Source: Mustelus asterias (taxonomy: Eukaryota). From it: a stretch of DNA of 64,000 nt. Below, one piece after another: positions 1-62,449 of the stretch; position 1 is the stretch's first letter; each line of letters starts with the position of its first letter. A program made the position numbers and the translations under genes. The notes under the pieces are model-generated. The model ran no database searches and was not told the origin of the DNA. It saw only the letters and a program-made list of their open reading frames with translations. The stretch covers positions 59,892,001 to 59,956,000 of the forward strand of contig NC_135804.1 of assembly GCF_964213995.1 (NCBI RefSeq), read 5' to 3'.

Positions 1-987
1 ACAGGAAGTTAAAATGCAAGTCCATAATTGCAGGAAACAATGCTCGCCCTTTTGCAACAGGTTTCCTACTATTATAAGTGTCCTTCTGACACAAATCTGC
101 CATCCCTGGAGGACTGTGTGCAATTTCGATCTTCCCATCTACGCTTAGCTTAGATGGGCTGGAATGGAGTTCATGAACTGATTCCTGTGATGAGGGTGTG
201 GTCCTATGAGAGAGAAAATAATAGACGAGGCCTACATTCTACATAAATGAGAACAGTAAGTGGATTGCATATTGAAATTTACAAGTTATTAAGGAGATAC
301 TCAGGGTAGGTACTTGAAAGATGCTTCCCGTTACTGCGGAATGCAAAACTAAGAGTTACAGACTCAGGATAAATGACCAGTCATTTAGGGCTGAGTTGAC
401 AGGAAGTATCGTTACTCCAAGGTTGCGTTCATTTATGCTTCAAGAATAGGGGAACCATTTCCTGTACAAGCGCAGTATCAGTCTAAGTGTGAGCTGTTAC
501 ACTAAATAAACAAGTTTGCTTGCCACAGGCTAAAAACACTGTGCAGTTCTTAATAAAGAGCAAGTTCTTGAATCCATTTTAATGTATCAACTATTGACGC
601 TGGGCAACATGCTTTTGGCGAGTCAGTGAATGATGAATGTATAGAATCAGGCTATTTCAGTAAACGAATTTCCCAACTCCTTTGATCTCAGAGGCTGCGA
701 ATAATTGTTTGCAATATTTTTTGTTAAACACCAAGAAATATTTTCTGAACCATGTACTTAAGAAGAAACTTCTTACCCCATGCATCTGTCAGAACAATGT
801 GTCTGGGATTAAGGGAATTTATTCCCTCAGAGCACTGCGAATCTTTGCAACATTCTACCCCCGAGAGCAGTGGAGGCTAAATCATTGAATTACTGAATTG
901 GACAAATTTCGAACTGTCGGGGAGACAACGGTCGTGAAACAATGTCAGGAAAGTTGAGTTGAGGTCAAGGTCCATGATCTTATTGCA

Positions 988-1126
988 TGATGTGGAGATG
1001 CCGGCGTTGGACTGGGGTAAACACAGTAAGGAGTCTTACAACACCAGGTTAAAGTCCAACAGGTTTATTTGGTAGCAAACGCCACTAGCTTTCGGAGCGC
1101 TGCTCCTTCGTCAGGTGAGTGGGAGA
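988..1126 (-). mobile_element. Penelope-like element terminal fragment
   Basis: Reverse complement of the 3' end of the element at 28830-28969; duplicated at ~55995-56133. Confidence 0.8.
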
Positions 1127-1655
1127 TCTCCTACTCTTGTGTCGTTTGCTTTGCGGCACCTCAATATCGGACCTTCATTGTAGATGCCTCAGTGGAACGC
1201 ACCGGCTTAAACTATTTCATATCAAATTTGGAATAACTGTTGAAAAATGAAGGAAGAATTTTACTATTTAGCCCAACTTGTGGAAAACTTTGTACAAATT
1301 CTGACACAATCAACTAATTAAAGCTGCCATATGTCACTTACATATTGAACTGGATTCAATGGTGAGAAAGATCTCAGATCTTCACTTTATCTTTGGTGCA
1401 AGGAATGAATTCTAAGTGGCTTTACAATTTGCAAGTGCATCTGCAAAGTGAACAAAAACAACTGGACATTAGAAAATAAGCTCTTGGTAAAATTGCAAAT
1501 TACAACGAAATGTTTCAACGATGCAGATTTATAGAGCAATGTGCGGGCTGGAAATTCATTACTGAAAACCAAATAGCATAATATTTCACTGCTTTTATTA
1601 GACCAGGATTTCTGTTATTTTGATTTGAATGTTGCAATATTAGGAAGAGAACTTG

Positions 1656-2304
1656 ACTTTTGATTTGATTTGATTTATTATTGTCACATGTATTAGTATA
1701 CAGTATAAAGTGTTACTACTTGCGCGTTATATAGACAAAACATATCGTACATATCGATGGAATGTGCAGAATATAGTGTTACAGTCAGAGCTAGAGTGTA
1801 AAGAAAGATCAAATCAATGCGAGGTAAGTCCATTCAAAAGTCTGATGCCAGCAGGGAAGAAGCTGCTTTTGAATCGGTTGGTACCCGATTTCAGACTTTT
1901 GTATCTTTTCCAGATGGAAGATGGTGGAAGACAGTCTGTCCGGGGTGCGTGGGGTCCTTGATTATGCCGGCTGCTTTTCCGAGGCAGCGGGAAGTGTTGA
2001 GAGAAGAAGGTCAGAGGTCAAGAATCCTGCAGCGAATAACTCGCCTCCTGACAATCCAAAGCATGTTCATCATCACAAGGTACAAGTCAGGAGTGTGTTG
2101 CGATAATCGCCCCTTGCCTAACGTGTGCATCATGTCAGTGGATCGAAGGCTGGTTTGAGTAATGGACTGGACTTCATTCACGACACTTTGTAGTTTGTTA
2201 TGGTCTTGGACAGAGCAGGGGCCATACCAAGCTGTGACACAACCAAAAAGAATGCTTTCTAAGGCGCTTCTGTAGAAGTTGGTGAGAGTTGTAGCGGACA
2301 TGCC
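1656..2304 (-). mobile_element. Rex1/Babar-type LINE 3' fragment
   Basis: LTNFYRSALESILFGCVTAWYG peptide, (TTTGA)n tail, flanking AACTTG target duplication (1650-1655 / 2305-2310). Contains a small fragment of another LINE at ~2000-2130. Confidence 0.85.
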
Positions 2305-2901
2305 AACTTGTAAAATAAACTGTTGCATGTATCTCATTGAGCCTGTTTCAGTTAAAAGCGCAATGTTTTCCAATGTGACTAAAACGACTGCGCTGCGGAA
2401 ATTAAATATTAAATAATGTTTACGGTCCTTTCTGCTTACATTTCTTGTCAGGAAGATTCGGCTGCTTTAGAATAAGTGTTAATATTAAGTAATTCGGTAA
2501 CATTCATTGCCAAAGTATGCCGTGTACCATAAACCATGACCTCGCCATGGATAAATGTGCCATACGTCAAGTGATATTAGTCACAAAAACAGTGGCACCC
2601 AGTGGTCTGCTTTGGTACGAGGAAGCATCTTCGGAAGAGTAAACGTACTCATGGTCTCGCCGCTCCGATTGTGCAATAGACAAGGCGCAAACCTATTGTT
2701 TTCTGAACAAAGAATCGCCTTAATTGCAGTTGGGTATCGTTTTCATTGCCAGACTCACAGTAACTACATTGCACTGTTAATACAAGCCTACTTGTGAAAC
2801 GAATAAATAAATTTTAAAAACTCAATCCAACAATTGCTATACGGCATCGCATGAGGGAAATCTGATGAACTGAAATCAATTTAAAACTTAAAATGCCATT
2901 G

Positions 2902-4720
2902 GAATCCTAAGGCATTTTATACATATGTTAGGAACAAGAGGGTTGCTCGGAAAAGAATCGGACCTCTCAGGGACAAAGGAGGGGAATTATGCTTAGAACC
3001 AAAGGAAGTAAGAGAGATCCTAAACGAATACTTTGCATCAGTATTCACAAAGGAGAGGGACATGTTGACTGGTAGTGTCTCAGAGAGATGTGTGGACCCG
3101 TTAGAAAGAAGCTCAATTACAAGGGAGGAAGTGTTAGGTTTTTTAGGAAACATTAAGACAGACAAATCCCCAGGGCCAGATGGCATCTATCCTGGACTCC
3201 TCAGGGAGGCAAGAGATGAAATTGCTGGGCCTCTAACAGAAATCTTTGTTTCTTCACTGGACACAGGTGAGTTCCCAGAGGATTGGAGGATAGCAAATGT
3301 GGTCCCGTTATATAAGGAGTGTAGCAAGGATAACCCGGGTAATTATAGGCCGGTGAGATTGATGTCCATGGTAGGGAAAGTGTTGGAGAAGATTCTTAGA
3401 GATGGGATATATGCGCATTTAGAACTGAATAATCTAATTAGCGATAGACAGCATGGTTTTGTACGAGGGAGGTCATGCCTCACAAATTTGGTTGAGTTTT
3501 TTGAGGAGGTGCCAAAACCGATTGACAACTGAAGGGCCGTGGATGTCATCTTTATGGATTTTAGTAAAGCATTTGACAAGGTCCCTCATGGCAGGCTGGT
3601 GCAAGATATTAAATCTCACGGGATGAAAAGTGAGCGAGCGAGATGGGTGGAGAACTGGCTTAGCCATAGAAGACAGAGGGTAACAGTGGAGGGGTCTTTT
3701 TCCTGTTGGAGGTCTGTGACTAGTGGTGTTCGACAGGGCTCTGTACTGGGACCTCTGCTGTTTGTGATATATATAAATGATTTGGAGGAAGATGTAGCTG
3801 GTATCATCAGTAAGTTTGCGGACGACACAAAGATTGCTGGAATTGCAGATAGTGATGAACATTGTCAGAGAATACAGCAGGATATAGATAGGCTGGAACA
3901 TTGGGCGGAGAAATGGCAGATGGAATTTAATCCAGATAAATGCAAAGTGATGCATTTCGGTAGATCTAATGTAAGGGGGAGCTATACAATAAATGGCAGA
4001 ACCATCAGGAGTATAGACACAATGAGGGACCTGGGTGTACAAGTCCACAGATCCTTAAAGGTGGCAGCACAGGTGGAGAGGGTGGTCAAGAAGGTATATG
4101 GTATGCTTGCCTTTATTGGATGGGGCATAGAATGTAAAAGTTGGAATATGATGTTGCAGCTGTACAGAACGTTGGTTAGGCCACATTTGGAATACTGCGT
4201 CCAGTTCTGGTCGCCACACTACCAGAAGGACGTGGAGGCTTTGGAGAGAGTACAGAAAAGGTTTACCAGGATGTTGCCTGGTATGGAGGGTCTTAGCTAT
4301 GAGGAGAGATGGGGTAAACTGGGTTTGTTCTCCCTGGAAAGATGGAGGATGAGGGGCGACCTAATAGAGGTGTATAAAGTTCTGAAAGGCATTGATAGGG
4401 TGAACAGTGGGAAGCTTTTTCCCAGGTCAGAGGTGACGAACACGAGGGGTCACGGGTTCAAGGTGAGGGGGGCAAGGTTCAACACAAATGTCAGGGGGAC
4501 GTATTTTACACAGAGGGTGGAGGGGGCCTGGGATGCACTGCCAAGCAAGGTGATTGGGGCGGACACGCTGGGATCGTTTAAGACTTATCTAGACAGCCAC
4601 ATGAGCAGAATGGGAATTGAGGGATACAAACGAATGGTCGAGTTGGGCACATGAGCGCGCAGTGTTGGAGGGCCGAAGGGCCTGTTCCTGTGCTGTATTG
4701 TTCTTTGTTCTTTGTTCTTT
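2902..4720 (+). mobile_element. CR1/HER1-type LINE, 5'-truncated (reverse transcriptase)
   Basis: KSPGPDGI, NYRPV, DFSKAFDKVPH, QGSVLGP and KFADDTK motifs; (TTTGTTC)n tail. Confidence 0.95.
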
Positions 4721-4974
4721 CAAGAAACACTATTTACGAACAAATTACTTTGTGGATGTGACAAATGTGAAAACTGGCGTAAACTCACCCATGACGCTTT
4801 GGGTTGCAGTAAAAATCCACTGTTGTTGTCGTCGACGCACTGGAATGAGGAATGGGGAGATGATCAGGATTGTTAATCGGAATTGTTATTCCAGTAATGT
4901 CGCGATACGTTGATTGAGGTCTCGATCACACTCGGCCCTAAGTACTCAGGACTAAAGGTTTGCACGTTTTGTGC

Positions 4975-5349
4975 TCCGACCGGAAGTAGAATGCCTTTGA
5001 TGAAGTGCGGCAGGGCCGCCTGCGGCCTGCATCGTTATTTTCAGGATTGAATAAAGGGTCGATGGACTTGAGGTGACAAAGAAAATCATTGGAACGAAGT
5101 TTCCAGAAAGTGGCTGAAAAACATTACTCTTCAAGAGGCAGCTTTTCGGCTGGCATTAAGGTCAGCTTCTACTTTGCAGACACACACAGAGAAATGTAAA
5201 CGCATCCAATACGCTGTTTTAGTCATGTGATCTCTCATGTCGTGGTCACATGTTTCATATAGTTAACCATAAAATCTATTTCTTACGCAAACTATTGTGG
5301 ATACCATTCTCATTTGCAGCAAATAGACAAGTAACGCATTATTTGCAAA
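4975..5349 (+). promoter_or_regulatory. Putative proximal promoter of the IgSF gene
   Basis: Unique DNA directly 5' of the leader, with an ETS-like CCGGAAGT (4980-4987) and E-boxes CATGTG (5224) and CACATG (5247). Position-based inference; the motifs are short. Confidence 0.3.
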
Positions 5350-5404
5350 ATGTCGATACAAGTTACAGTTCACTACATGGCTCTTCTGGGCGCGTTTTGG
5401 TCAG
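5350..5404 (+). CDS. Leader (signal peptide) exon of VJ-C1 IgSF gene, copy 1
   Basis: ATG at 5350 gives MSIQVTVHYMALLGAFWS plus 1 nt, then CAG|GTACAT donor. Phase 1 matches the V exon acceptor after a 188-nt intron. Conserved in copy 2. Not in the ORF track because it is in a different frame. Confidence 0.72.
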
Positions 5405-5592
5405 GTACATCCCGTTATTAGATGCAGCCGGTTTCACAATAGCAAATACTAATTTAAAAGACTCTGGAGCTGTTACCCACTGTACAATTAGATACTGTGC
5501 TTCTCTAATTCGATTGCTTGTTTTTATAATTTACTTCTCTCAGTTGTTTTTCTTTATCTGTTACATCACCGCCTTTGTTACTTTCCTGACAG

Positions 5593-5898
5593 CCGCCGGA
5601 GTAACTTGGAACAAAGTGGTTCAGGTCCCTAAATACTTGAAGGTGAGCAGAGGAGCGAATGCTTCCATGTTCTGCACATTTCCGATCTTTCAAGATGCGC
5701 CCGATGTTCGTTGGTGGAGACGCGGAGAGCAATCCTTTCTCCAACCAGACAGCAGAAAGCGATTTGATGCGAACAAGGGAAGCAGTTCGCTTGAATTCCT
5801 GAATGTGACTTTTGCAGATTCCGGAGTGTATTATTGTAAAGTAAACTATCCGAAAAAATCTAATGAAACTGGAACTGGCACCCAGCTTACTGTGTACG
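5593..5898 (+). CDS. Germline-joined VJ-type Ig V-domain exon, copy 1
   Basis: Acceptor ctttcctgacAG, 306 nt, phase 1/1, donor G|GTAGGA. Encodes (A)AGVTWNKVVQVPKYLKVSRGANASMFCTFPIFQDAPDVRWWRRGEQSFLQPDSRKRFDANKGSSSLEFLNVTFADSGVYYCKVNYPKKSNETGTGTQLTVY, with B-strand Cys, C-strand Trp, DSGVYYC and a GxGTxLTV J-like motif. Confidence 0.93.
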
Positions 5899-6057
5899 GT
5901 AGGAGTTATTGTAAACGGGAGGATTTCAGCTCAGCGCCATATATGCAATTTGATCCTTTTTATCACTGGAGGAAGAGCAATAACGAATTCCAATTACAGA
6001 ACACTGGGTTGTCCTCCATTGACCTCGATGCACAGTGGACATATTAGTTCGAATAAA

Positions 6058-6505
6058 AGCAAATGATTGCGGATACTGGAATCTGAAGCAAAAACAGAAA
6101 GTGCTGGAGAATCTCAGCAGGCCTGATAGCCTCTGTAGATAGAGAACAGAACTAAAGTTTTAAATCCGGATGACCTGCTCTGACGAACGGTCGTCAATTC
6201 TCGAAACGTTAGCTCTGTTCTCCCTCCACAGATGAAGACAGAGCTGTTGAGATTTTCCAACAGTTTCTGTTTTTGTTATTTTAGATTCGAAATCATGCAA
6301 TGGAAAAATGCGAAATAAAAAGACAACGTTTTGGAAAAAGTCAGCAGGCCAAGGAGCTTATGTGGAGAGAAAAAACGCTTTCATTGTCGATTATGAAAAT
6401 CGACCTGAAACGTTAGCACGGTTTCTCTACACAGATGTTCCCTTACCTGCCGAACATTCTCCGTATTTTCAGTTTGAATTTGAGATTTCCTGGCTCTGCA
6501 GTATT
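6058..6505. repeat. Two adjacent ~200-bp palindromic (inverted-repeat) non-autonomous elements
   Basis: 6080-6160 is the imperfect reverse complement of 6205-6288; similar arrangement at 6305-6505; short relative at 8080-8165; duplicated at ~62609-63057. Confidence 0.7.
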
Positions 6506-8913
6506 TTGTGTTGATGGTTGAATGGGATTTCAGTGTCTGGTTCCTTCATGTCACAATGACGGTGCCACAACTCAACAATGGAATCAACTTTAACACCTCA
6601 CAAGACAAACCTTTTACAAATTTTGAAGATCAGTTTATTAATCTGAACAAGGAAGGAATATTCCCTGCGTGCTCGGTAACACCCGCAGTTGGAATTGCGA
6701 AGAGTAACAAATCAAAACGAGTCCAAAATGGAGGTGATTGCAAAGAGAAAGAAGTTTTCGGTGAAAGTCAGCCCAGTCATTCACGGTATATCATTTTGTT
6801 GCAGATTGCCGTTTCCAAATCGTCTCTGTGCCGAGTTCGTTGAGCTCAATCAGGAGGCGAAAATCAATTGGGATTCTTACTCCTCACTGCTCCCGTTTTA
6901 AGTTGAACAATTTGGTCATATTTACAAGGAACTAGACTGTAGCTAAATTCCACCCAAAGGTCAGACGCGTTGCGTAATTTTGCCAGTCACCTTAAATCGG
7001 TCTTCTGGTTATCGACTCTTGTGTCACTGAGAACACTTTCTCCTTATTGACTTTATGAAAACTGATCAGAACTTTCAAAGTCGCTATCCAGCCTCCTCTA
7101 AACATTATCACGTCTAAATAGAACAACCGTAGCTTATTCAGTCTCTGCATCTAATCCAAGTCCTTTCACCCTGGTAAAGATCCAACATTCTCAGTGCCTT
7201 CATAATAAACTCAGGTGAAAACTCCCCAACCACAGCGACGAATTTTCCTCAAACCAGATCCCTTTTTCCTCTAACTGCTCGAAATTGCCGATGTCACACT
7301 TTCTATACCGAAATTTGTGATGGACAGAGTTTTGCTTTGTTTCAGTGTCAACCCTATGTCCGCAATTTATACTTGGTACATGGGTCCAATTATATGTTTC
7401 ACATTCCAAACTTTTCACAAACCGGATTCTGCAACACAGTGAAAGGAAGGATCTTGCCCTCAATGCTGGATTCCACTCCGGGTTTAGACTTTGCAGGACA
7501 GTAAAGGTGCCCGATGCTTTTGTTTGAACCTCTTGGGTACGCCACCTGAATTTCCTATGGTATTGTCATGACTGATAAAGCGGAGGCGGGATATCACCGA
7601 ATATTCATAGAAACATCTGGGATCCCTTTTGGTAATTCATGATTCCCATGTACACTTCCCATGCCCCGACGAAAGTTGTGGTAGGAGATCGAGAGAACAC
7701 TAGCTTCTTTCTACCCAGCAGGTTAAAACAAGCCCATGTGAAAAGAATTGAGGAATTCTGAGGCTTTGCTGGAATAACAGCCAACGTAATATTTAATGTT
7801 AATAATGCCTGTAAATTACTAATTTTCTACTACTACAATGTCGCAAAAGTAGACTCATAAGTAAAATATATTAAATAGATTGATTATAATAAATAAATCT
7901 ATGTAAACCTAACAAGGAACTTTACAAGGTGATTGTGGATAGAGTGGGCAGACTGATAGAGCGTTTCGCATCAGAAAATGGTAAATTTGGACTGCTCGAA
8001 GGAAGATCTTCTCCAGACAAAATGCGGTCAGCTGACCGAATGACGCTACAGAAGAGCAAACGCCTGGAATTAACGGCTCAAAAAGCAAAATACTGCGGAT
8101 GCTGGAAATCTGAAATGAAAACTTAGTCAGACCTGATGTGTTTACCCAGCATTTTTTGTTTTGATCCCTGGAATTAACCGCTGGGTTATTTTTCCTATTC
8201 GGTTTCAGTCATCCGTATGGGTATTATGATCTATATAGATACATATAATTATCAAAATAAAATCTTTCCTGGTTTACAAAATACTCTAACCTTCATTCCC
8301 TCCTCGAGAAAGATCCTTTAATGAATGATGCAAGATTTGAAACCTTCAGCGTAGACACTGAAATGTTATATAATCAACAGTATCTTGTCTGAAGTCGATT
8401 TAGACATCGGAGATATTTTGATTTCACACACATTTTGATTTTACACATTAAACGAAAAAATCTGTTTTGAAACTAACTAAATATTCGAAGCGGGCCATTT
8501 TTTCAAATCCTCACACTTTAGTACGTCAATGATTCTTGCAGAAAAAAAACGTTAGTAGAACCTAATGTTCGTGCAGACTGGTTGGTGCTCCCTTTCTGAT
8601 ATATTCAGGCCGAAATCTCACTCGAGGTCACTGCTGCCACACACAATTCCGCGCCAGGATCTGCTGCTTTATTTCCGAACTGTGATACTTCGCTGGTTGT
8701 TATCAATTCTGGGAGATTGGTCATCATTGTGTATCGCTTGCTGAACATCCGGCATTTTTGCTGAGCATCGGATAACATTGTATGCAATAAATGCACGTCA
8801 GACGTTTCAAAAGCACGATAACTGTTATCACAGTACGAGTGTAAGAGCGTATTGAGGTTAAGCCACTGAGAATATTCTCCTTTTAATTCAATTATTTTTC
8901 ACCCTGTTAAAAG

Positions 8914-9210
8914 TTCCCCCAACACCACTGAAAATCGTTCCGATTGAAGAGAATTCAGCGACTTCTCGAAGGTTCGAGTGCAAAACGGCTGCATTTTACC
9001 CGGAGGATTTAAAAATCTCCTGGCAAAGAGATGGTGTGGAAATTCTGGCCGGAATAGAAACTGTGAGAAACGAGACAGTGGATGGTCTTTTTGAGGTCTC
9101 CAGTTCTTTGGAAGAAGCGCAGCCTCGCCAGAACGGAGCCGTTTATACATGCCTGGCATCTCATATCTCCCTTAAGGTGCCCGCCAGTGTCAGCTACACC
9201 GTCATGCAAG
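8914..9210 (+). CDS. Ig C1-set domain exon of the same gene
   Basis: Acceptor tttttcaccctgttaaaAG, 297 nt, phase 1/1, donor G|GTAAGG. Encodes VPPTPLKIVPIEENSATSRRFECKTAAFYPEDLKISWQRDGVEILAGIETVRNETVDGLFEVSSSLEEAQPRQNGAVYTCLASHISLKVPASVSYTVMQ, with C1 hallmarks C-x4-FYP-x6-W, DG-x-F...SSL and YTC-x3-H. Confidence 0.92.
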
Positions 9211-11556
9211 GTAAGGTTGGAAACATTTACTGCAGCGAGTGGGGGGAAATGCTCCAAACTGTAGTTATTTATTAGATAGGAAGGGGCAATTGTTTAAACT
9301 TGAATATACGGGGTGAATGTGGACTTAATCGCGATGTCACATCAATGAAAATGAATTAAAATAATCAAGATGGTCGTTGGAGAAGGGAGAATATGTCCCT
9401 GAAAAGATCTGAAACGGGAAGTTGATGTGCGAACAGTTCGAAAGTGAAAGCTTATTTCTCACCAAATTCTTGCCAAATGAACTGAACTTACAAATGGATC
9501 GGCTTTAGTATAGTCATTTTTAATTGGGACAGTTCCTGTGTGCAACTTTAGCCAACATCGTTTGAGGGCATTTCCTCCACAATCCAGATACTTTTGACCA
9601 TTATTAACCTATTTCTCTTTTATCCAAGCATTAAACTTCGGAAACACCTTCTTTCACCTGGTTTTACTTCATTTGCTGAATTCCCTCGTTCTTTAATTTT
9701 TTGGAAATGCTGAAGCACGAAGAATTGTTTCTAATACTCCTCGAGTGACAATTTCGGTTTTGGACCCTTTACTCCAATAAACAATTGTTCATTACACTGT
9801 GGGTGGAAACTTTATAAATAAGGGAATAACAGTGCAAGCACAGAGCATTTGGTACATGGTGCCTGTATTGGTGACAGCGTGTCTGCCATGCCAGGAGCCG
9901 ACCCAACCTACCAGGGCGAATATCAGAAAACCTAAACTATGTGTCGTCCTGATTAAGTTAACCGATCACAGACTGATCATCAGCGAGCTACATTTTCATC
10001 GATGAGGACGGTGTTGGGTGCCCAACTTGCAGTGTCCCACGTTATGATTATAGAGGCGCACTTTTGTGATTTTTCTACCCAGCCAAAAATATGTTGGAAA
10101 TTAGTTTTTGCATTGTTCATTGGCATTGCTCATAAACTACCGGAGAGAACAGAGCAAACACATTCTGACTGAAAATGGACATCATTGTCCTATGAGATTT
10201 GAAGAAAAGCCAATCGCCAAAAGAATGGCGCTGGCACCGAGCAACAGGCTCTCTCGCAAAGTGGAATGTACTATGTGAACACGTTCACTTGATTCTCAGT
10301 TTGGGGATTGTATTTTGAGATTATTATCGTACGTTAATTCACGCTGGCAATTTAATATCGGGTCCCAAGTTTAGAGTAGCAATTTTATGGATCCCTTGCA
10401 TTTATAGAAGCCAGTGCTATTTGCTTCCATTCGACAATGCTGATATAAACAATTACATGTGTATATTTTAATATTGCATTGCAGAGTACAGTTTCCACAA
10501 TCTGATGATTTCACGGCATGTTCTCGGTTTTTTGATAATTCTTGGACTGCTGGGCATAATTGTGAACCTGTAACAGGTTTCAATTGAAGGTAAGAGAACG
10601 CCATCTTAATTCCGTAAACCACGTTGAAAGTATATACAGAGATAACATTGGTGGGTTCGAAAGGGGCAAGACAAGTAATAAATTCCGAACGTCAATTTTT
10701 AGTTTTGGCTTAGTTTTAGCTGCTTTTATTCAAAAAGGGTTTGGTTTCAACCTCTCACTTGAGAAAAATGAGCACAAAATATTTCAGAGCAGCACTACTG
10801 GAAGTTTGGTCTTCTTTCAATCGTTTAAATAGGGTATCCTCTGCTCTGTCCGGTCGCCCCAATGACCTCATGGGGCATTTTCGTAACTGGGTATCGTAGT
10901 GCTCGCTGATCTCCTGAGCAGTATTTAGCCTTTAATCTTCTTCACTGAAACCGACGCCCGGAATAACGACCTGGAGAAGAATGTAATGTTGATTTCCATC
11001 CAGCTCGCTCTGAAAACACAGGTAGTTTCATCTTTTCCAGAGGACATCCAAACAAACATCTTCTAATGTGTTTGTCTCCGTGCGATGCCCAAGCGTTGCA
11101 TACGTCTTTATTAAGAGTCAAAGGGTAATTATTTACGTATGCAAGCTATGGCTGGATACCAAAGCCTTTTGGCTAACATTAAGGCGATGCATCAAGCCCA
11201 TGATGGGTGTAATGCCTTATCTTGTCAGTTTGGACTTTCGTTGTCTCTCTTGTGGGAACCATGAATTGGAAACAATTGAAATTTGAGTTTCGTTTTTGGA
11301 GCAAGAAAAGAATGAATTCTGGTTTTCCGGGTCCACTCTGCGCATTGGTTTTCTAACTTTGTGGAGTAAAAAAAATTAAAAAACAAATCGCTGCATACCA
11401 AGTGAATGCAGACAGTTTGAATATGTCAACTCAGATATATAATCGAGAGCTGTATTTGTATTTAAATGTTATTCTATATCTAATGAGTGAAAATCCGTCT
11501 TAGGTAATCAGGAGTTCACATTTATCTTTTCTATAAAAGAGATGTAACACATAATT

Positions 11557-11601
11557 ACACACAACACACACACACAGACAGACACACACACACACACACA
11601 C
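11557..11601. repeat. (CA)n microsatellite
   Basis: Direct inspection. Confidence 0.9.
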
Positions 11602-14134
11602 GAATCAAACAGTATCGCCAAAAGAAACTGAAAGCATAAACGCAAGTTTAGGAAGCTGATGGTTTTGTAATATTGGAAATAGTGACATATTTTTCTGAAT
11701 TAAGCTTGCCTCGGCCCTGGTTGTATTTATGGTATGGATATTTTAATAATTATCATTGAATCACAATGAGAGGATATCTTTGGAGACAGTTCCTTTAAGT
11801 TTGATATTGATCCAGTTGAATGCGCATCCGTGAATCTGGAAATATAAATGCCGTGCTGAATGTACTTGTGGATCTTTGGATATTGACGCTGACGGGATGA
11901 AATGGGAACTGTGTGTGGATATAAAATAGAAAAGAGTAACTAAAATAAAGTGCATTGTTTCGAAAACACTTTTCAATTTTGTTTTTAATGATCAGGTAAA
12001 GATCGGCTGATAATTTCCGCCTCTGTTCATAATTGCACAAGAGCAGTACCCTTTGGGAATGAAGAACACGTGTTCAGATACAAGTGGGAGAAGAAATACA
12101 CGAAATAAGAAAGAAGATGAAGAAGCCACAATCAAGACGGATGAGGGGCGAGTGCAGCATTCGCTTACAGTCATTTTAATTTGCATTTCACTACACTATC
12201 TTTCTGTAAGATTAGAACATGAAAATACAATTGTAGTTGGCCCTGTGCAAAAAATCAGTTTAGTGCATTCCATGTAATGCAGCAACAGCAATGGCCTTGT
12301 TTGAATGCTCATGTTGTATTTTTCGGTGGGATGGGGGGGGGGGGGGTGGGGGGAGGAGAAGGGCGGCGCTGGCACATACCTTGATGTATGAATCTCGTTA
12401 ATGGAAATTATTGTTTTCAATAAATTTAATTTTTAATACAAATACGCATCACAATACTTCCAGTAAGTAAAACTTTCATATGTCTTTTTATCGAAGCCAT
12501 TGGAAATGTTTGCGAGAAACCGTCCTGTTCAGGCAATTTAAATCTGAGATATATTGCGGGACCATCAACAACAGTCCATGTTGGTTGTATTTCTGTCTCT
12601 GTCAACATTCAGTAGGTGAAAACTGTAGCTGTTCAAGAAGGCAGCACAACACCACCTTGTCAGGGGTAATTAAGGATGGGCAATAAATGCTGGCCTGGAC
12701 AGCGACGCCAAGCCCATGGAGGAATTTTTAAAAAGGAAGGATTGCTTTCAAAAGATGAAGCCACTTTCGTCCCAGATCACCATAGACTGCTTTCCTTTTT
12801 GAGGCGGGGGTGGGGGGAGGCGGGGGGGGGGGGGCAGCTAACTGGTGGTGCTTTAACCTGAGGAACGTCGCGTCTCATGCGAAGGGCAAGACTCAGGAGC
12901 CGGACCTTCATAAAAACCTCAGCAGGTATGAGAACTGAACCTGTGCGTTTGGTATCAGGAACTAGCCATCCTGCGACCTGAGCTGACCATCTCCAAGCAT
13001 TAGCCATGTTCTCCTGGGCGTTCAACTGACTGCATATCTTCTCGCTCTTATTTCAACAATGAACAAGACGATCTTGCGGGTAGCTGGTCCCAATCAGACA
13101 GACCTTAAAGTCAAGTAAACAATCGAGACATGTTTCAGCATAAATTTCTGTTGTTACGACCTTCTGCCCTAATTTAGTATTTGGTTGCCAAGTTATGAAC
13201 TTCACTTCAAATTTGGACACTTTTAATGTGGAATGCGATCGGACAGGCCGTGCGCGTGATTTTGGCAACACGTCAATGCAAATCCGTCAATTTAGTTTAC
13301 CATTGTAAGCGCATAGTCGGGCAAACTTTCACATAAAACAATCTATTCAGTTAGACCCACCTGTACAATCAAATATCAAATTTTAAGTTGAGAAGTTTTC
13401 CATATTAATTACAATTGCATATGAAGTATTTCAATTAATTTTAAAAGCATAAAATCGTTGACACATGAGCCTTGAATCAATCAGTGAGAGATCGGTATTA
13501 ATGTCCATCGCACCCAAGAGGAAATGATCTCACCGGATCGCTAACAGATACCACCTAGTTAAGCGCGTTGTTTCCCGTACTGAAACAGCAAACTGGCTTA
13601 GTTTTGACATAAACGTTCTTGTGAAGCTAGATCTAAAAATAACTGTAATTCGCATCAGGAAAAGCAACAAAGGAATTCAATTGTCCTGTTTCCTCAAAGT
13701 GGTTTTCTCTCATGTGGAAGATTTCACAATTTCTGCAGCCCTGCCATGCCAATTGACATGTATAACATGCAAGCGTTTGCATGTGTGTGTTTTGTGTGCC
13801 TGTGCGCAGGTCGGGGTGATATCCAACAGGATGTACTTCGTCCTTGTGGAGGTCACCGGCGAGTGAACAGCTAATAAACCCGCCTGGTCGACCAACGCAT
13901 TTAGGAAAGCAAGTCCGCCATCTTTACACAGTCCGTTCTACATGTGATTTCAACCCCACGACAATGTGGGTGACTCGTAACTGATCTCTGAAATGCTTTG
14001 CAAGCTGCAAATAGTTGCAGAAAAGGCGAGAATTAAAAATAGGCATACCTTGCCCAGTGGAAACTGCCAAGTCTTCCTCATTAACATCTATAGATATACA
14101 CCAGAATTGGCAGGGGTAAAATAGGCTGATGCGT

Positions 14135-16560
14135 TCAAACACGTCTCCTGTTCCACTCGAGCCCCAAACATCCTGAACCACTGCTACACAAATATCAAAC
14201 ATGCCTACTGCTCTATCAATCGCCCATACTTTGGCAATTCAGACCACAAGGCTGTGCTCCAGCTCCCGGCTTACAAGCAAAAGCTGAAGCGGGAGAATCC
14301 ATCAAAGAAAGTCTTGCAATGTTGGTCTGAGGAATCGGATGATCGTCTACGGGGCTGCTTGGAGTCAGTGGACTGGTCATTACTTAGAAACTCTGCGATC
14401 AGCCTGAACGAGTACGCCACTAAAGTAACTGACTTCATTAGGAGGTGTGCAGAAGACTGGGTGCCAAAGAGGCAAATCCGTGTGTTCCCCAACAGGAAAC
14501 CATGGGTGAACTGGGATATCTACTGCTTGCTGAATTCCAGGTCCGAGGTGTTCCAGTCAGACGACACTGACCTATACAAGATGCATGTGTATTCTACATT
14601 GTATTCTAAAAAGATGCATGTGTCTTTATATGCCCTGTTTGTGAACAGAACTCCCACTTACCTGACGAAGGAGCAGCGCTCCGAAAGCTAGTGGCTTTTG
14701 CTACCAAATAAAACTGTTGGACTTTAACTTGGTATTGTGAGACTTCTTACTGTCTGTCCAAGAAAGCCAGATACGATCTAAGGAGATCAATCAAAGATGC
14801 CAAAAGACAGTACCGAACCAAACTAGAGTCCCAGGCTAGCAACACCGACCCCCGCGGACTATGGCAAAGACTGCAAGACATAACGGTCTACAAGATGAAG
14901 GCATGTAAAATCGGCGGCTCCAACGCACCTTGCCTGATGAGCTCAATTCATTCTACGCCGGTTTTGAGCAAGAGCTCAGTGAGAGCATGCCCTCCACCCT
15001 AGAAGCCCTGGATGAACCTGTACCTGTGGTCACCATTGCAGATGTCAGAGCAGCTTTCTCGAAGGTAAACCCATGGAAAGTGACTGGCCTGGATGGGGTG
15101 CCAGGACGAGGACTCAAATCCTGTGCAGATCAGCTGGTGGGAGTATTCGCAGACATCTTCAACCTCTTTTTACAACAATCTGAAGGCCATATCTGCTTAA
15201 AGAAGACAACCATCATCCCACTATCTAAGAAAAACCAAGCAGCGCGCCTTAAAGACTATCGGCCGGTGGCTCTGACATCCATCATTATGAAGTGTTTCCA
15301 AAGGCTCGTCATGGCACGATTCAATTCCAGCCTCCCGGACTACTTGGACCCACTACAGTTTGCCTATTACCGCAACAGATCCACAGCAGACGCAATCTCC
15401 CTGGTCCTGCACTCAACCCTGGAACCCCAGCTAGACAACAAGGACACCTATGTCAGCCTCCTATTCATTGACTACAGTTCAGCCTTCAACACCAATATTC
15501 CCACAAAACGCACCTCCAATTCCCTAGCCTGGGCCTCAGAACCTCCCTCTGCAACTGGATCCTGGACTTCCTAACTCACATACCACAATCAGTAAGGATA
15601 GGCAACAACACCTTCTCCACGATCATCCTCAACACCAGTTCCGCACAAGGCTGTGTTCTCAGCCCCCTACTATACTACTTATACACCTATGGCTGTGTGG
15701 CCATATTCCCCTCCAATTCGATTTTCAAGTTTGCTGACGACACCACCGTAGTGGGTCAGATCTCAAACAATGACGAGACAGAGTAGATGAATGAGATAGA
15801 GAATCTGCTGACCTGGTGCGGCAAGAATAATATCTCCCTCAATGTCAACAAAACAAAGGAGATTGTCATCGACTTCTGGAAGTGTAAAGGAGAACATGCT
15901 CTTGTCTACATCAACGGGGATGAAGTAGAAAGGGTCGAGAGCTTCAAGCTTTTAGGTGTCCAGATCACCAACAACCTGTCCTGGTCCCCCCATGCCGACA
16001 CTATAGTTAAGCCCACCAACACCTCTACTTTCTCAAAAGACGAAGGAAATTTGGCATGGCAGCTGCGACTCTCACCAACTTTTCCAGATGCACCATAGAA
16101 AACATTCTTTCTGATTGTATCACAGCTTGGTACGACTCCTGCTCTGCCCAATACCGCAGGGAACTACAAAAGTCGTGAATGTAGCCCAATCCATCAAGCA
16201 AACCAGCCTTCCATCCATTGACTCTGTCTCCACTTCCCTCTGCCTCGGCAAAGCAGCCATCATAATTAAGGACCCCACGCACCCCGGACATTCTCTCTTC
16301 TACCTTCTTCTGTCGGGAAAAAGATACAAACGTCTGAGGTCACCTACCAACCGACTCAAGAACAGCTACTTCCTTGCTGCTGTCAGAATTTTGAATGGAC
16401 TTACCTTGCATTATGTTGATCTTTCTCAATACCCTAGCTCTGACTGTAACACTACATTCTGCACTTTCTCGTTTCCTTTGTCTGCATAGCGCAACAAACA
16501 ATACTTTTCACTGTATGTTAATACATGTGACAATTATAAATCCAATCTAATCAAATCAAA
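14135..16560 (+). mobile_element. Rex1/Babar-type LINE (decayed ORF2) with a nested Penelope end at ~14582-14752
   Basis: [33 protein letters not shown] and KFADDTT motifs; (AAATC)n tail. Confidence 0.9.
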
Positions 16561-21593: not shown

Positions 21594-21914
21594 CATAGAA
21601 ACATAGACATCCTACAGTCCAGAAGGAGGCCATTCGGCCCATAGAGTCTGTACCGACCACAATCCCAACCAGGCCCTATTCCCATAACCTTCATTTGCTA
21701 ATCACCCTGACGCTCGGGTCAATTTTGCGTGACCAATCAACCCAACCCACACATCTTTGGACAGTGGGAGGAAACCGGAGCACCCGGAGGAAACCCACGC
21801 AGACACTGGGAGAAAGTGAAAACTCCTCACAGACAGTAGTCCAAGGCAGGAATTGAACCTGTGTCCCTGGCGTTGTGTGGCAGCAGTGCTAACCACTGCG
21901 CAACCGCGCCGCCC
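21594..21914 (-). mobile_element. HE1-type tRNA-derived SINE
   Basis: Reverse complement of the gggcggcgcggt...cagtggttagcactgctgcc head; LINE-derived tail. Confidence 0.85.
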
Positions 21915-29994: not shown

Positions 29995-30300
29995 GGGCAG
30001 GACGTGGCACATGGTTAGCACTGCTGCCTCACAGCGCCAGGGACCACGTTCGATTGCCATCTTGCATTATTTTCTGTGCGGAGTCCACACGTTCTCCCTG
30101 TGTCTGCATGGGTTTCCTCTGGCTGCTCTGGTTTCCTCCCACAGTCCAAAAGATGTGCTGGTTAGGTGCATTGGCCGTGCTAAATTCTCCCTCAGTGTAC
30201 ACGAACAGGCGCCAAGTGTGGCGACTGGGGGATTTTCACAGTAACTTCATTGCAGTGTTAATGTAAGCTTACTTGTGACACTGATAAAGAAACATTAAAA
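29995..30300 (+). mobile_element. HE1-type SINE
   Basis: ggttagcactgctgcctcacagcgccaggga head; tail cacagtaacttcattgcagtgttaatgtaagc. Confidence 0.88.
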
Positions 30301-35782: not shown

Positions 35783-37439
35783 ATTAGCCTGTAACAGAGA
35801 AGGTGTTACAGGCTAATAGGCTGGAGGAAATAGATGTTCGGAGGGAGGATGTCCTGGCAGTTTTGAATAAACTGAAGGTCGATAAGTCCCCTGGGCCTGA
35901 AGAAATGTATCCTAGGATTCTTTGGGAGGCAAGGGATGAGATTGCAGAACCTTTGGCATTGATCTTTGGGTCCTCGCTGTCCACGGGGATGGTGCCAGAG
36001 GACTGGAGAATGGCGAATGTTGTTCCTCTGTTTAAGAAAGGGAATAGAAATGACCCTGGTAATTATAGACCGGTTAGTCTTACTTCGGTGGTTGGTAAAT
36101 TGATGGAAAAGGTCCTTAGAGATGGGATTTACGACCATTTAGAAAGATGCGGATTAATCCGGGATAGTCAGCACGGATTCGTGAAGGGCAAGTCGTGCCT
36201 CACAAATTTGATAGAATTTTTTGAGGAGGTAACTAAGTGTGTTGATGAAGGTAGGGCAGTTGATGTCATATACATGGATTTTAGTAAGGCGTTTGATAAG
36301 GTCCCCCATGGTCGGCTTATGATGAAAGTGAGGAGGTGTGGGATAGAGGGAAAGTTGGCCAATTGGATAGGTAACTGGGTGTCTGATCGAAGACAGAGGG
36401 TGTGGTGGATGGAAAATTTTCGGATTGGAGGCAGGTTGCTAGCGGAGTGCCACAGGGATCAGTGCTTGGTCCTCTCCTCTTTGTGATTTTTATTAATGAC
36501 TTAGAGGAGGGGGCTGAAGGGTGGATCAGTAAATTTGCTGATGACACCAAGATTGGTAGAGTAGTGGATGAGGTGGAGAGCTGTTGTAGGCTGCAAAGAG
36601 ACATAGATAGGATGCAAAGCTGGGCTGAAAAATGGCAAATGGAGTTTAACCCTGATAAATGTGAGGTGATTCATTTTGATAGGACTAATTTAAATGTGGA
36701 TTACAGGGTCAAAGGTAGGGTTCTGAAGACTGTGGAGGAACAGAGAGATCTTGGGGTTCATATCCACAGATCTCTAAAGGTTGCCACTCAAGTGGATAGA
36801 GCTGTGAAGAAGGCCTATAGTGTGTTAGCTTTTATTAACAGGGGGTTGGAGTTTAAGAGCCGTGGGGTTATGCTGCAACTGTACAGGACCTTGGTGAGAC
36901 CACATTTGGAATATTGTGTGCAGTTCTGGTCACCTCACTATAAGAAGGATGTGGAAGCACTGGAAAGAGTGCAGAGGAGATTTACCAGGATGCTGCCTGG
37001 TTTGGAGGGTAGGTCTTATGAGGAAAGGTTGAGGGAGCTAGGGCTGTTCTCTCTGGAGCAGAGGAGGCTGAGGGGAGACTTAATAGAGGTTTATAAAATG
37101 ATGAAGGGGATAGATAGAGTGAACGTTCAAAGACTATTTCCTCGGGTGGATGGAGCTATTACAAGGAGGCATAACTATAGGGTTCGTGGTGGGAGATACA
37201 GGAAGGATATCAGAGGTAGGTTCTTTACGCAGAGAGTGGTTGGCGTGTGGAATGGACTGCCTGAAGTGATAGTGGAGTCAGACACTTTAGGAACATTTAA
37301 GCGGTTATTGGATAGGCACATGGAGCACACCAGGATGATAGGGGGTGGGATAGCTTGATCTTGGTTTCAGATAAAGCTCGGCACAACATCGTGGGCCGAA
37401 GGGCCTGTTCTGTGCTGTACTGTTCTATGTTCTATGTTC
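35783..37439 (+). mobile_element. Young CR1/HER1 LINE, 5'-truncated
   Basis: RT in two ORFs (227 and 318 aa, single frameshift), (TTCTATG)n tail, TATTACT target duplication (35776-35782 / 37440-37446). Confidence 0.95.
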
Positions 37440-61900: not shown

Positions 61901-61955
61901 ATGTCGATACAAGTTACAGTTCACTACATGGCTCTTCTGGGCGTGTTTTGGCCAG
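61901..61955 (+). CDS. Leader exon of VJ-C1 IgSF gene, copy 2
   Basis: MSIQVTVHYMALLGVFWP plus 1 nt, CAG|GTACAT donor; offset 56551 from copy 1. Confidence 0.7.
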
Positions 61956-62143: not shown

Positions 62144-62449
62144 CCGCCGGAGTAACTTGGAACAAAGTGCTTCAGGTCCCTAAATACTTGAAGGTGAGCA
62201 GAGGCGCGAATGCTTCCATGTTCTGCACATTTCCCACATTTCAAGATGCGCCCGATGTTCGTTGGTGGAGACGCGGAGAGCAATCCTTTCTCCAACCAGA
62301 CAGCAGAAAGCGATTTGATGTGAACAAGGAAAGCAGTTCGCTTGAATTCCTGAATGTGACTTTTGCAGATTCCGGAGTGTATTATTGTAAAGTAAAATAT
62401 CCAGAAAAATCTAATGAAACTGGAACTGGCACCCAGCTTACTGTATACG
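62144..62449 (+). CDS. Germline-joined VJ-type Ig V-domain exon, copy 2 (its C1 exon would lie beyond the window)
   Basis: Same splice sites (ctgacAG; G|GTAGGT), open frame, 11 nt and 6 aa differences from copy 1 by manual comparison. Confidence 0.92.

What the first reader, a model, noticed from the sequence alone, without database searches (positions are those of the whole stretch)
5350..9210. Non-rearranging antigen-receptor-like gene: leader, germline-joined VJ exon, C1 exon
Seen: three phase-1 exons that splice in frame into signal peptide, V and C1. The J-like GxGTxLTV strand is encoded inside the V exon, with T where Ig/TCR J segments have F/W, and no RSS is present. Established: C1-set domains are restricted mainly to Ig, TCR, MHC, beta-2-microglobulin, tapasin, SIRP and a few relatives. 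Single-exon VJ domains (NKp30, SIRP, CD28 family, NITR, chicken PRARP, shark UrIg) are regarded as relatives of the pre-RAG antigen-receptor ancestor. Inference: this is a shark VJ-C1 receptor family. I cannot assign it to a named gene, so it may be undescribed. The ORF track hides it by reading through introns.
Basis: partly seen in the sequence, partly recalled or inferred. Interest (0 to 1): 0.85.

Follow-up and report, generated by a model that had tools for sequence, protein, structure and literature searches.

The report
Shark activating-type VJ-C1 receptor gene
This is a real, non-rearranging immune-receptor gene with an antibody-like variable domain, a constant domain and a charged membrane anchor, and it belongs to a large, so far unnamed gene family found in sharks, rays and chimaeras.

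Summary
The three exons exist as described: AG/GT borders, phase 1, Pfam V-set 4e-14 and C1-set 4e-9. I added a fourth exon, 10485-10589. It encodes a transmembrane helix with an Arg and an in-frame TAA at 10571, so the protein has no tail. A tandem duplicate starts at 61901; its V exon is 94% identical.

The gene is not an orphan. Its V exon is 78% and its C1 exon 79% identical to Scyliorhinus canicula XP_038662025.1. Related V-C1-TM proteins occur in 15 cartilaginous-fish species. They carry only contradictory automatic names: SIRP-alpha-like, NCR3LG1-like, tapasin-related-like, Ig-lambda-like.

The family has two forms: TM-Arg with a short tail, and uncharged TM with ITIM-like tails. That makes it a paired activating/inhibitory family, and this gene is the activating type.

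It is not shark NCR3, which forms a separate clade on other chromosome-sized contigs. It is no closer to SIRP than to Ig light chains.

No RNA run was available and several key papers were not held. The scan noted similar genes elsewhere in this genome.

The parts
5350..5404 (+). Exon 1: split leader (MSIQVTVHYMALLGAFWS plus 1 base), donor GT at 5405
   Evidence: matches the N-termini of S. canicula relatives in tblastn
5405..5592 (+). Intron 1, 188 bp (short leader intron). It holds a leader-like reading frame at 5517-5592 that matches the alternative first exon of S. canicula isoform X1, but starts with TTG here instead of ATG
5593..5898 (+). Exon 2: compact V-set domain with a germline J-like strand GTGTQLTV. 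There are 54 residues between the two Cys and three N-x-S/T sites
5899..8913 (+). Intron 2, 3015 bp, with two high-copy interspersed repeats (about 6016-6373 and 7985-8163) and no further Ig-like exon
   Evidence: depth bins; no tblastn hit
8914..9210 (+). Exon 3: C1-set domain (FYPEDLKISW, YTCLASH)
10485..10589 (+). Exon 4 (found here): short stalk plus TM helix LMISRHVLGFLIILGLLGIIVNL with an Arg. AG at 10483-10484, donor AAG|GTAAGA at 10590, 105 nt, phase 1 to 1
10571..10573 (+). In-frame TAA directly after the TM helix. Relatives read on (..IIVDHVRYVQLKS..)
   Evidence: the contig of run X3 has the same reading at 10568, while contigs of X1/X2 carry one extra A there (table 4)
11996..12108 (+). 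Vestigial last coding exon behind the stop. Its first codon is split with exon 4, so the printed peptide GKDRLIISASVHNCTRAVP.. is the frame read from 11995 (the G of the acceptor AG), with its own stop TAA at 12106-12108. It is like the tails of P0159 and P0162
   Evidence: (E 0.11, weak, but in the right place and phase)
61901..61955 (+). Copy 2, leader exon (MSIQVTVHYMALLGVFWP)
62144..62449 (+). Copy 2, V exon: 11 of 306 bases differ from copy 1, as 6 replacement and 4 silent codon changes. The rest of copy 2 lies beyond the window
56..7442 (+). Duplicated segment: 56-2770 matches 55064-57777 at 95.1%, and 2760-7442 matches 59367-64000 at 93.8%

Best explanation
Window 5350-10573 (+) is a four-exon gene for a type I membrane glycoprotein. 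Its parts, in order:
- a split leader;
- one compact V domain whose J-like G strand is germline-encoded, so no V(D)J recombination is needed or possible;
- one C1-set domain;
- a stalk of about 8 residues;
- a transmembrane helix with an Arg near its outer end, and no cytoplasmic tail.

It is the activating-type member of a paired activating/inhibitory receptor family that is spread over cartilaginous fish. Its nearest relative is S. canicula XP_038662025.1.

Proposed mechanism (inferred, not shown): the V domain binds a still unknown ligand. The TM Arg pairs with an acidic TM residue of an ITAM-bearing adaptor dimer of the FcR-gamma / CD3-zeta / DAP12 type. Ligand binding therefore activates the cell. 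Sister genes with similar ectodomains, uncharged TM helices and ITIM-like tails (LTYAAL and similar) deliver the opposite signal.

The gene was tandemly duplicated recently; the two copies are about 5% diverged.
For: Shown:
- Exon structure and domains.
- Per-exon identity to XP_038662025.1: V 78%, C1 79%, and TM 12 of 18 over the stretch that BLASTP aligned. Borders fall at the same residues.
- In the V tree, the window copies plus P0004 (XP_038662025.1) form a clade with 100/100 support, inside a 21-row subfamily with 100/96 support.
- Family range: 28 of 28 hits and 29 of 31 are chondrichthyan. 15 species are named.
- Two tail classes among 46 rows. Eight rows (7 genes) have R[LFS][VI]L[GA][FI]L.I.. 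TM helices with tails of 8-40 residues. Fifteen rows have ITIM-type Y motifs in tails of 68-135 residues.
- P0159 (TM-Arg) and P0161 (no charged residue within the TM helix; an Arg precedes it) are sister rows in the V tree, with end branches of 0 and 0.06.
- No RSS.
- The stop at 10571 is also read in an independent sample (run X3).

Inferred from established knowledge (recalled): TM Arg/Lys receptors such as SIRP-beta, NKp30, NKp46, KIR2DS and the TCR chains signal through acidic-TM ITAM adaptors.
Against: - There is no expression evidence. All 4 runs offered are genomic contigs, and none of the 3 joints listed matches an exon junction.
- The protein stops right after the TM helix, where relatives go on for 8-40 residues. 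It also loses the YVQL/YVRL motif seen in the catshark relatives, so this copy could be decaying.
- The V exon differs between the two copies as much as the introns do: 3.6% against 3.7-5.1%, with 6 replacement and 4 silent changes. Constraint is therefore weak or unproven.
- The adaptor, the ligand and the expressing cell type are unknown.
Confidence: 0.7

Rival explanations
1. It is the cartilaginous-fish orthologue family of SIRP (signal-regulatory proteins), simplified to one C1 domain.
For: - NCBI's pipeline names many members SIRP-alpha-like or SIRP-beta-1-like.
- The layout is the same: a VJ-type V, then C1, with both ITIM-bearing and charged-TM forms.
- SIRP-alpha 2wng is the best non-antibody, non-UrIg chain of V-C1 type for the family profile, at 104.6 bits in total.
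- The only mammalian hit of the profile search is a yak SIRP-beta-1-like protein, E 6.7e-19.
- The LTYAAL-type tail motifs resemble SIRP-alpha's ITIMs (recalled, not tested).
Against: - Per stretch, SIRP-alpha d1-d2 scores 58.0 bits, against 80-84 bits for Fab light chains over the same V+C1 span.
- With the V-only profile, SIRP is not among the best 60 chains (all of them at least 39.5 bits). CD79b scores 49.2, TCR V-alpha 45.6 and IgNAR V 43.9.
- There is one C1 domain, not two.
- The TM residue is Arg near the outer end, not the Lys of SIRP-beta (recalled).
- Synteny was not testable.
Confidence: 0.12
2. This particular copy is a decaying duplicate, a pseudogene in the making. It has lost its cytoplasmic tail through an indel and a stop, and it is not used.
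For: - TAA at 10571 sits where relatives continue. The following exon (11996..) is still recognisable but out of reach.
- Other contigs carry an extra A at 10568 that gives another reading..IIVNHVTGFN stop.
- Exon and intron divergence between the two copies are alike.
- There is no RNA evidence.
Against: - All four exons are open with consensus splice sites.
- The stop leaves a complete 23-residue TM helix with the Arg.
- Both readings end within a few residues of the helix, so a tail-less form seems tolerated.
- Activating receptors often have minimal tails (recalled; for example TCR-alpha).
- Replacement changes are fewer than neutral expectation, though the counts are too small to test.
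Confidence: 0.15
3. It is a member of the shark NCR3 (NKp30) family.
For: - It has a non-rearranging VJ domain with a TM Arg.
- The V is compact (54 residues between the Cys), as in the I-type fold reported for human NKp30 (passage in PMC12272517).
- T stands before the GxG of the J-like strand, as in human NKp30 (recalled).
Against: - Shark NCR3-like proteins (P0142, P0217-P0219, one of them named NCR3-like by NCBI) have no C1 domain and form their own clade with 100/98 support.
- They lie on different chromosome-sized contigs from the family in 3 of 3 species checked. White shark: 115.8 against 193.5 Mb. Catshark: 163.5 against 198.8 Mb. Bamboo shark: 35.0 against 73.2 Mb.
- NKp30 is not among the best 60 chains for the V profile.
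Confidence: 0.03
4. It is a germline-joined immunoglobulin light chain cluster, of the kind known in cartilaginous fish.
For: - Fab light chains are the best two-domain matches of the family profile, at 80-84 bits.
- Some members are auto-named Ig lambda-like.
- Shark Ig lambda is V-J joined in the germline (PMC12227049 discussion).
Against: - It has a TM exon with Arg, and relatives have ITIM tails.
- The V is short and lacks the usual FR2/CDR2 length.
- Identity to any light chain is low.
- The family is conserved as its own group from chimaera to rays.
Confidence: 0.01

Closest known systems
SIRP family (SIRP-alpha / SIRP-beta)
   Same: Non-rearranging V with a J-like strand followed by C1-set domain(s). 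Paired design: ITIM-bearing inhibitory forms, and charged-TM, short-tail activating forms that use an ITAM adaptor. It is a multigene cluster.
   Different: One C1 domain instead of two. Arg rather than Lys in the TM (recalled). The V is shorter. Profile similarity is lower than to Ig light chains (58.0 against 80-84 bits). Orthology and synteny were not tested.
T-cell receptor chains and Ig light chains
   Same: Same modular plan: split leader, V ending in a GxGTxLxV strand, C1-set domain and, as in TCR, a TM helix with a basic residue and almost no tail. Light chains are the best V+C1 matches of the family profile. TCR V-alpha and IgNAR V are among the best single-V matches.
   Different: No RSS and no separate J segment. 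T replaces F/W before the GxG. There is no stalk cysteine for an interchain bond. The V lacks about 10 residues of the C'-C'' region. Sister genes carry ITIM tails.
NKp30 / shark NCR3 family
   Same: Germline VJ domain, compact V, TM Arg in activating forms, and both activating and inhibitory-looking members in sharks.
   Different: NCR3-like proteins have no C1 domain, form a separate clade, and lie on other chromosome-sized contigs.
UrIg / UrIg2 (PMC12227049)
   Same: Non-rearranging VJ exon with a split leader followed by C1-type domains, retained in cartilaginous fish. UrIg2 (PDB 9dmx) is the top chain for the C1 exon, at 60 bits summed over three domains.
   Different: UrIg has three C domains and is secreted; UrIg2 has nine or more C domains. 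Here there is one C1 plus a TM. Per-domain scores are modest: 49.0, 28.6 and 40.3 bits. The family is multigene with ITIM/Arg signalling types.
Chicken PRARP genes (Fu et al. 2019; paper not held, content recalled)
   Same: [quoted passage not shown] That is the same architecture as the inhibitory members here.
   Different: I could not compare them.

Membership tests
Chondrichthyan VJ-C1-TM family (RefSeq models with automatic names only) | Leader, V with the WW[KR]xGE..FL and GxGTGSxLxV motifs, then VPPTPLKI..CKTAAFYPE..W..DG..GLYEVSS..YTCLVSH C1, then TM | tested here: met
   The window exons carry VRWWRRGEQSFL, GTGTQLTV, PPTPLKI, CKTAAFYPEDLKISW, GLFEVSS and YTCLASH, matching the consensus of alignment A1. 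V is 78% and C1 79% identical to P0004. The clade has 100/100 support.
Chondrichthyan VJ-C1-TM family, activating subtype | TM helix beginning R[LFS][VI]L[GA][FI]L.I.. with a short tail | tested here: met
   The window has ISRHVLGFLIILGLLGIIVNL followed by a stop. Eight of 46 rows share the pattern.
SIRP | Ectodomain of one V and two C1-set domains | tested here: not met
   One C1 exon lies between V and TM. No further Ig exon was found with 26 family queries.
SIRP | Sequence closer to SIRP than to other V-C1 proteins | tested here: not met
   SIRP-alpha d1-d2 scores 58.0 bits against 80-84 bits for light chains. SIRP is absent from the best 60 for the V-only profile.
SIRP | Conserved synteny with the SIRP cluster | not testable with these tools
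The window holds only retroelement debris besides the two copies.
NKp30 / NCR3 | A single VJ domain directly followed by stalk and TM, with no C domain | tested here: not met
   A C1-set exon lies at 8914-9210.
NKp30 / NCR3 | V domain groups with NCR3 V domains | tested here: not met
   Shark NCR3-like V domains form a separate clade with 100/98 support and lie on different contigs in 3 of 3 species.
Rearranging antigen receptors (Ig, TCR) | Separate V and J segments flanked by RSS | tested here: not met
   V and J-like strand are in one exon. There is no RSS-like site in 5200-6300.
Germline-joined Ig light chain | Secreted V-J-C chain without a membrane anchor | tested here: not met
   The TM exon at 10485-10589 is in phase with the C1 exon.
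UrIg / UrIg2 | VJ followed by three or more C1-type domains | tested here: not met
   There is one C1 exon only. The UrIg architecture is taken from PMC12227049.
PRARP | Sequence relationship to chicken PRARP1/2 | not testable with these tools
   No PRARP sequence was reachable and the paper is not held.
B7 family / B7H6 (the name NCR3LG1-like is given to several members) | V plus CD80-type C domain, acting as a ligand without activating or inhibitory TM/tail types | tested here: inconclusive
   Pfam C1-set (37 bits) beats C2-set_2 (23.3 bits). The TM Arg and ITIM tails fit a receptor. No B7H6 sequence was compared.

The most novel reading that the evidence does not exclude
The family may be the closest living membrane-bound, non-rearranging relative of antigen-receptor chains. 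It is a germline VJ-C1-TM receptor with a basic TM residue and no tail, which is a TCR-chain layout. Its V+C1 profile is nearer to Ig light chains than to SIRP. It is kept from chimaeras to rays and is not linked to the NCR3 loci. On this reading it would descend from the pre-RAG receptor stock, alongside UrIg/UrIg2, and it would show that such a receptor already used charged-TM adaptor signalling and ITIM pairing.
Probability: 0.15. Interest if true: 0.85.

Novelty: new member of a known kind. Interest (0 to 1): 0.55.

Why it matters
Non-rearranging genes with a single-exon VJ domain followed by a C1 domain are sought as relatives of the gene that the RAG transposon split. UrIg and UrIg2 are presented as the shark relics of that stock (PMC12227049).

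This locus shows that cartilaginous fish also keep a large family with three properties. It is membrane-bound. It has the VJ-C1-TM layout of a TCR or Ig chain. It has the activating/inhibitory pairing of innate receptor families such as SIRP, KIR and NITR.

In public annotation the family is scattered under five or more unrelated automatic names. It is therefore easy to miss and easy to mislabel.

Naming it, placing it in V and C1 trees, and mapping its linkage would bear directly on how the antigen-receptor architecture and adaptor-based signalling came together. If it turns out to be the shark SIRP or PRARP counterpart, it still dates that family to the base of jawed vertebrates.

Tried and rejected
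Expression. The look-up of sequencing runs (kind rna) offered only 4 runs of one study, none on record as RNA. Laid on 5300-10650, they cover introns and exons alike. They give 3 joints, all between repeats at 6125-8092 and none at an exon junction. They are genomic and say nothing about splicing.

I could only compare the contig lengths reported for proteins. I cannot map lengths to chromosome numbers, so 'not on the MHC chromosome' remains an inference. The white shark MHC is on chromosome 19 (PMC10751288, Fig. 2 legend). The family member lies on a 193.5 Mb record and the NCR3-like genes on a 115.8 Mb record.

C1-only PDB profile. The best 60 are all multi-C1 chains: 58 antibody heavy-chain constructs, UrIg2 and one light-plus-heavy chimera. 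No ranking of single-C1 families could be read from it.

Atlas. The search on the window's own C1 exon was not possible. On the stored homologue P0004 it listed V-C1 clusters with mixed automatic names at scores 0.94-0.96, which is a lead only. On the tail of P0096 it gave no usable hit.

Other family exons in the window. tblastn with 26 family proteins at E up to 1 found only the known exons, the 11995 piece, and repeat-derived matches.

Literature. None returned a paper describing a VJ-C1-TM paired family in cartilaginous fish.
- Of PMC12227049 I read the outline, sections 4 and 7, part 1 of section 12, and passages.
- Of PMC10751288, PMC3964593, PMC12272517, PMC10450919 and PMC11302387 I read passages only.
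- Not held: Kinlein 2021, Flajnik 2012, Ohta and Flajnik 2015, Ohta 2019, Flajnik 2023 (UrIg) and Fu 2019 (PRARP). What I say of them is recalled.
Files S1-S9 of PMC10751288 (gene lists per chromosome) and the tables of PMC12227049 may bear on whether these genes were catalogued.

Rejected readings: germline-joined IgL (a TM exon is present); NCR3 (a C1 domain is present, and the clade and contigs are separate); B7H6-type ligand (receptor-type TM and tails).

Full report
OBSERVATION

Exon 1 (5350-5404) opens with ATG, encodes MSIQVTVHYMALLGAFWS plus one base, and is followed by GT.

Exon 2 (5593-5898) follows an AG and is followed by GT. It encodes 101 whole codons that Pfam scores as V-set (E 4.3e-14, 53.1 bits; I-set 1.6e-10). 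It ends in NETGTGTQLTVY, so a J-like G strand lies inside the V exon, with T before the GxG.

Exon 3 (8914-9210) encodes 98 whole codons scored as C1-set (E 4.3e-9, 37 bits against a cut-off of 21). It has the FYPEDLKISW and YTCLASH signatures.

All junctions are phase 1.

A scan for heptamer/12 or 23 spacer/nonamer sites found none in 5200-6300 or 8700-9400, and 9 in the whole window by the same loose rule.

The bacterial-style ORF 5250-6047 indeed reads the V exon through both introns.

A fourth exon lies at 10485-10589. It has AG at 10483-10484, donor AAG|GTAAGA, 105 nt, and phase 1 to 1. It encodes YSFHNLMISRHVLGFLIILGLLGIIVNL, then TAA at 10571-10573. This is a short stalk and a transmembrane helix with an Arg near its outer end. 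The protein ends with the helix.

A further exon-like piece lies from 11996. Read in frame from 11995, it encodes GKDRLIISASVHNCTRAVP... It matches the tails of two relatives, weakly (E 0.11) but in the right place and phase. In this copy it lies behind the stop.

Contigs of runs X1 and X2 carry one extra A after 10568, which would read ..IIVNHVTGFN and then stop. The contig of run X3, from another sample, has the window's reading (table 4). The stop is therefore not an assembly slip of this window.

That fits the extra-A reading. I could not see that DNA.

DUPLICATION

Positions 56-2770 and 2760-7442 recur at 55064-57777 (95.1%) and 59367-64000 (93.8%). Copy 2 has an intact leader exon at 61901 and a V exon at 62144-62449.

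The two V exons differ at 11 of 306 bases, giving 6 replacement and 4 silent codon changes. The introns are 94.9-96.3% alike. The V exon has diverged about as fast as non-coding DNA, and the counts are too small for a selection test.

The rest of the window is LINE and retroelement debris: RT, endonuclease and zinc-knuckle ORFs.

RELATIVES

An exhaustive phmmer search of the V exon against 1.84 billion representatives gave 798 proteins at E up to 0.001. The top of the list is taken by giant multi-Ig proteins whose scores are sums over many domains.

The best single-domain hit is P0004, at 3.2e-47 and 78% identity over residues 20-120 of 259. P0004 is S. canicula XP_038662025.1, automatically named 'tyrosine-protein phosphatase non-receptor type substrate 1-like isoform X2'. 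Its C1 is 79% identical to the window's C1 exon over residues 122-219. Its TM region aligns from residue 221. The exon borders I read therefore fall on the domain borders of an independent gene model.

Word-indexed searches gave the following:
- With P0004: 28 proteins, all 28 chondrichthyan.
- With a 37-sequence family profile: 31 proteins, 29 of them chondrichthyan, plus a yak SIRP-beta-1-like protein (6.7e-19) and a frog VH-like protein (8.8e-4).

Named species:
- Sharks: Scyliorhinus canicula, Chiloscyllium plagiosum and C. punctatum, Hemiscyllium ocellatum, Heterodontus francisci, Heptranchias perlo, Carcharodon carcharias, Cetorhinus maximus, Mustelus asterias.
- Rays: Mobula hypostoma and M. 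birostris, Narcine bancroftii, Hypanus sabinus, Hemitrygon akajei.
- Chimaera: Callorhinchus milii.

The names given by the sources contradict one another. They include SIRP-alpha-like, SIRP-beta-1-like, NCR3 ligand 1-like, tapasin-related-like, Ig lambda-1-like, MHC class II beta-like, T-cell receptor beta-like and 'uncharacterized'. I saw no curated name.

Within each species, all members I looked up lie on one chromosome-sized record: 198.8 Mb in catshark, 99.7 Mb in horn shark, 80.6 Mb in M. hypostoma, 66.5 Mb in Heptranchias and 73.2 Mb in C. plagiosum.

FAMILY ANATOMY

The alignment has invariant Cys and Trp in both domains. Its strong consensus runs WW[KR]xGExxFL...DSRKxF...DSGxYYC...GNGTGSxLxV | VPPTPLKI...CKTAAFYPE...W.KDG.EI.TGI...GLYEVSS.LE..QP...VYTCLVSH.

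Behind the C1 domain, 46 rows fall into recognisable classes:
- Eight rows (7 genes) have a helix beginning R[LFS][VI]L[GA][FI]L.I.. and ending II[VAF][DE]H, with tails of 8-40 residues.
- Three rows have Q in place of the R.
- Fifteen rows have ITIM-type motifs (LTYAAL, LTYATL, TEYAQL, SVYAQL, LVYAAV and others) in tails of 68-135 residues. The TM helix, where the model includes one, is uncharged.
- The rest are truncated or unclear models.

The window gene has the first type.

In the V tree (53 rows, IQ-TREE) the two window copies and P0004 form a clade with 100/100 support, inside a 21-row subfamily (100/96) that holds both sharks and rays. Arg-TM and ITIM members are interleaved. In catshark, P0159 (Arg-TM) and P0161 (no charge within the helix) are sister rows (100/96), with end branches of 0 and 0.06. 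This is the pattern of paired activating/inhibitory receptors.

COMPARISON WITH KNOWN FAMILIES

NCR3. A bamboo-shark protein with two V domains and an Arg-TM (P0142) led to white-shark and catshark proteins with a V, a stalk, a TM and a VQYCTL-type tail. NCBI names one of them NCR3-like. They have no C1 domain and form their own clade (100/98). They lie on other records than the VJ-C1 family in all 3 species checked: 115.8 against 193.5 Mb, 163.5 against 198.8 Mb, and 35.0 against 73.2 Mb.

The white shark MHC is on chromosome 19 (PMC10751288, Fig. 2 legend). I cannot convert record lengths into chromosome numbers. The statement that the family is not MHC-linked is therefore an inference. It is supported only weakly by the scan's own notes, which place MHC genes on other pieces of this genome.

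SIRP, Ig, UrIg. With the full family profile against all PDB sequences:
- Fab light chains score 80-84 bits in one V+C1 stretch.
- SIRP-alpha (2wng) scores 58.0 bits for d1-d2 and 45.2 for d3.
- UrIg2 (9dmx) scores 49.0, 28.6 and 40.3 for its V-end/C1, C2 and C3.

With a V-only profile, the best single-V chains are CD79b (49.2), TCR V-alpha (45.6) and IgNAR V (43.9). SIRP and NKp30 are not among the 60 shown, the last of which scores 39.5.

The ectodomain is thus a generic antigen-receptor-type V-C1 pair. It is roughly equidistant from the named families and, if anything, nearer to light chains than to SIRP. This is similarity ranking, not phylogeny. A proper reference panel was out of reach.

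The V is short: 54 residues between the Cys, against roughly 65 in Ig/TCR V domains (the latter figure recalled). This fits the scan's separate note on a missing C'-C'' region.

MECHANISM

Shown: a complete reading frame for leader, V, C1 and TM with Arg; sister genes with ITIM-type tails; and no means of rearrangement.

Inferred from what is established for SIRP-beta, NKp30, NKp46, activating KIR and the TCR chains (recalled): the TM Arg docks an acidic-TM ITAM adaptor dimer, and the receptor activates the cell when its V domain meets its ligand. The Arg near the outer end of the helix is the position typical of FcR-gamma/CD3-zeta partners rather than DAP12 (recalled).

Unknown: the ligand, the cell type and the oligomeric state. 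There is no stalk cysteine, so a TCR-like disulfide-linked dimer is unlikely.

LITERATURE

The library searches returned no description of such a family. The 2025 UrIg2 paper speaks of UrIg/UrIg2 and NCR3 as the non-rearranging VJ genes of sharks and does not mention a VJ-C1-TM multigene family in the parts I read.

Six directly relevant papers were not held, and supplements were closed. I put the chance that the family is already described under some name at roughly one in three.

VERDICT

The gene is a real, probably functional, activating-type member of a chondrichthyan-wide paired VJ-C1-TM receptor family. That family is present in public annotation but has no consistent name.

It is a new member of a known kind: non-rearranging V-C1 paired receptors. 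There is a modest chance that the family as a whole is an important missing piece in the antigen-receptor origin story.

The scan noted similar genes at several other places of this genome, including 164 kb before and 9.75 Mb beyond this window. Those notes are unchecked and do not count as support.

Noticed in passing
window 3539-4654, 14930-15574, 35803-37358, 44914-45930, 49184-50020, 57562-59010 (+): Long ORFs with reverse-transcriptase, endonuclease and zinc-knuckle Pfam hits (LINE and retroelement remains). One sits about 700 bp upstream of the receptor gene and is part of the duplicated unit.
   Followed up: partly
window 6016-6373 and 7985-8163: Two stretches in intron 2 with contig depth hundreds of times that of their surroundings in all four runs. 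Many loose ends and joints link them. They are high-copy interspersed repeats.
   Followed up: no
window 21764-21838 (+), 30083-30175 (-), 50583-50633 (+): A repeated element encodes a peptide like VGGNRSTRRKPTQTQGE. The same peptide forms the C-terminus of the catshark model P0145 (XP_038663089.1), which suggests that model ends in an exonised repeat or a mis-prediction.
   Followed up: no
window 5517-5592 (+): The end of intron 1 is open in frame with the V exon and matches the alternative first exon of catshark isoform X1 (P0151, MVFIIYLSQL...). Here it begins with TTG instead of ATG, so this alternative leader is probably not usable.
   Followed up: partly
window 10677-10682 (+): An AATAAA lies 104 nt after the TAA and 88 nt after the exon 4 donor. 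It could end an unspliced short transcript, or it may be chance in AT-rich DNA.
   Followed up: no
window 57777-59367 against 3112-4708: Copy 2 of the duplicated unit carries an extra 1.6 kb that is 85% like the LINE piece upstream of copy 1. This points to a second, older insertion or partial duplication.
   Followed up: no
window 11558-11600: A CA-rich microsatellite lies between exon 4 and the vestigial last exon.
   Followed up: no
proteins P0101, P0034, P0065 (turtles): Turtle proteins with four to seven tandem V domains, each ending in a GNGTGTQVTI-type J-like strand. One has an Arg-bearing TM and one has ITIM-like tail motifs. Their automatic names are unrelated (Fc receptor-like 5, titin-like, NCAM2). 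This is another unnamed non-rearranging VJ family.
   Followed up: no
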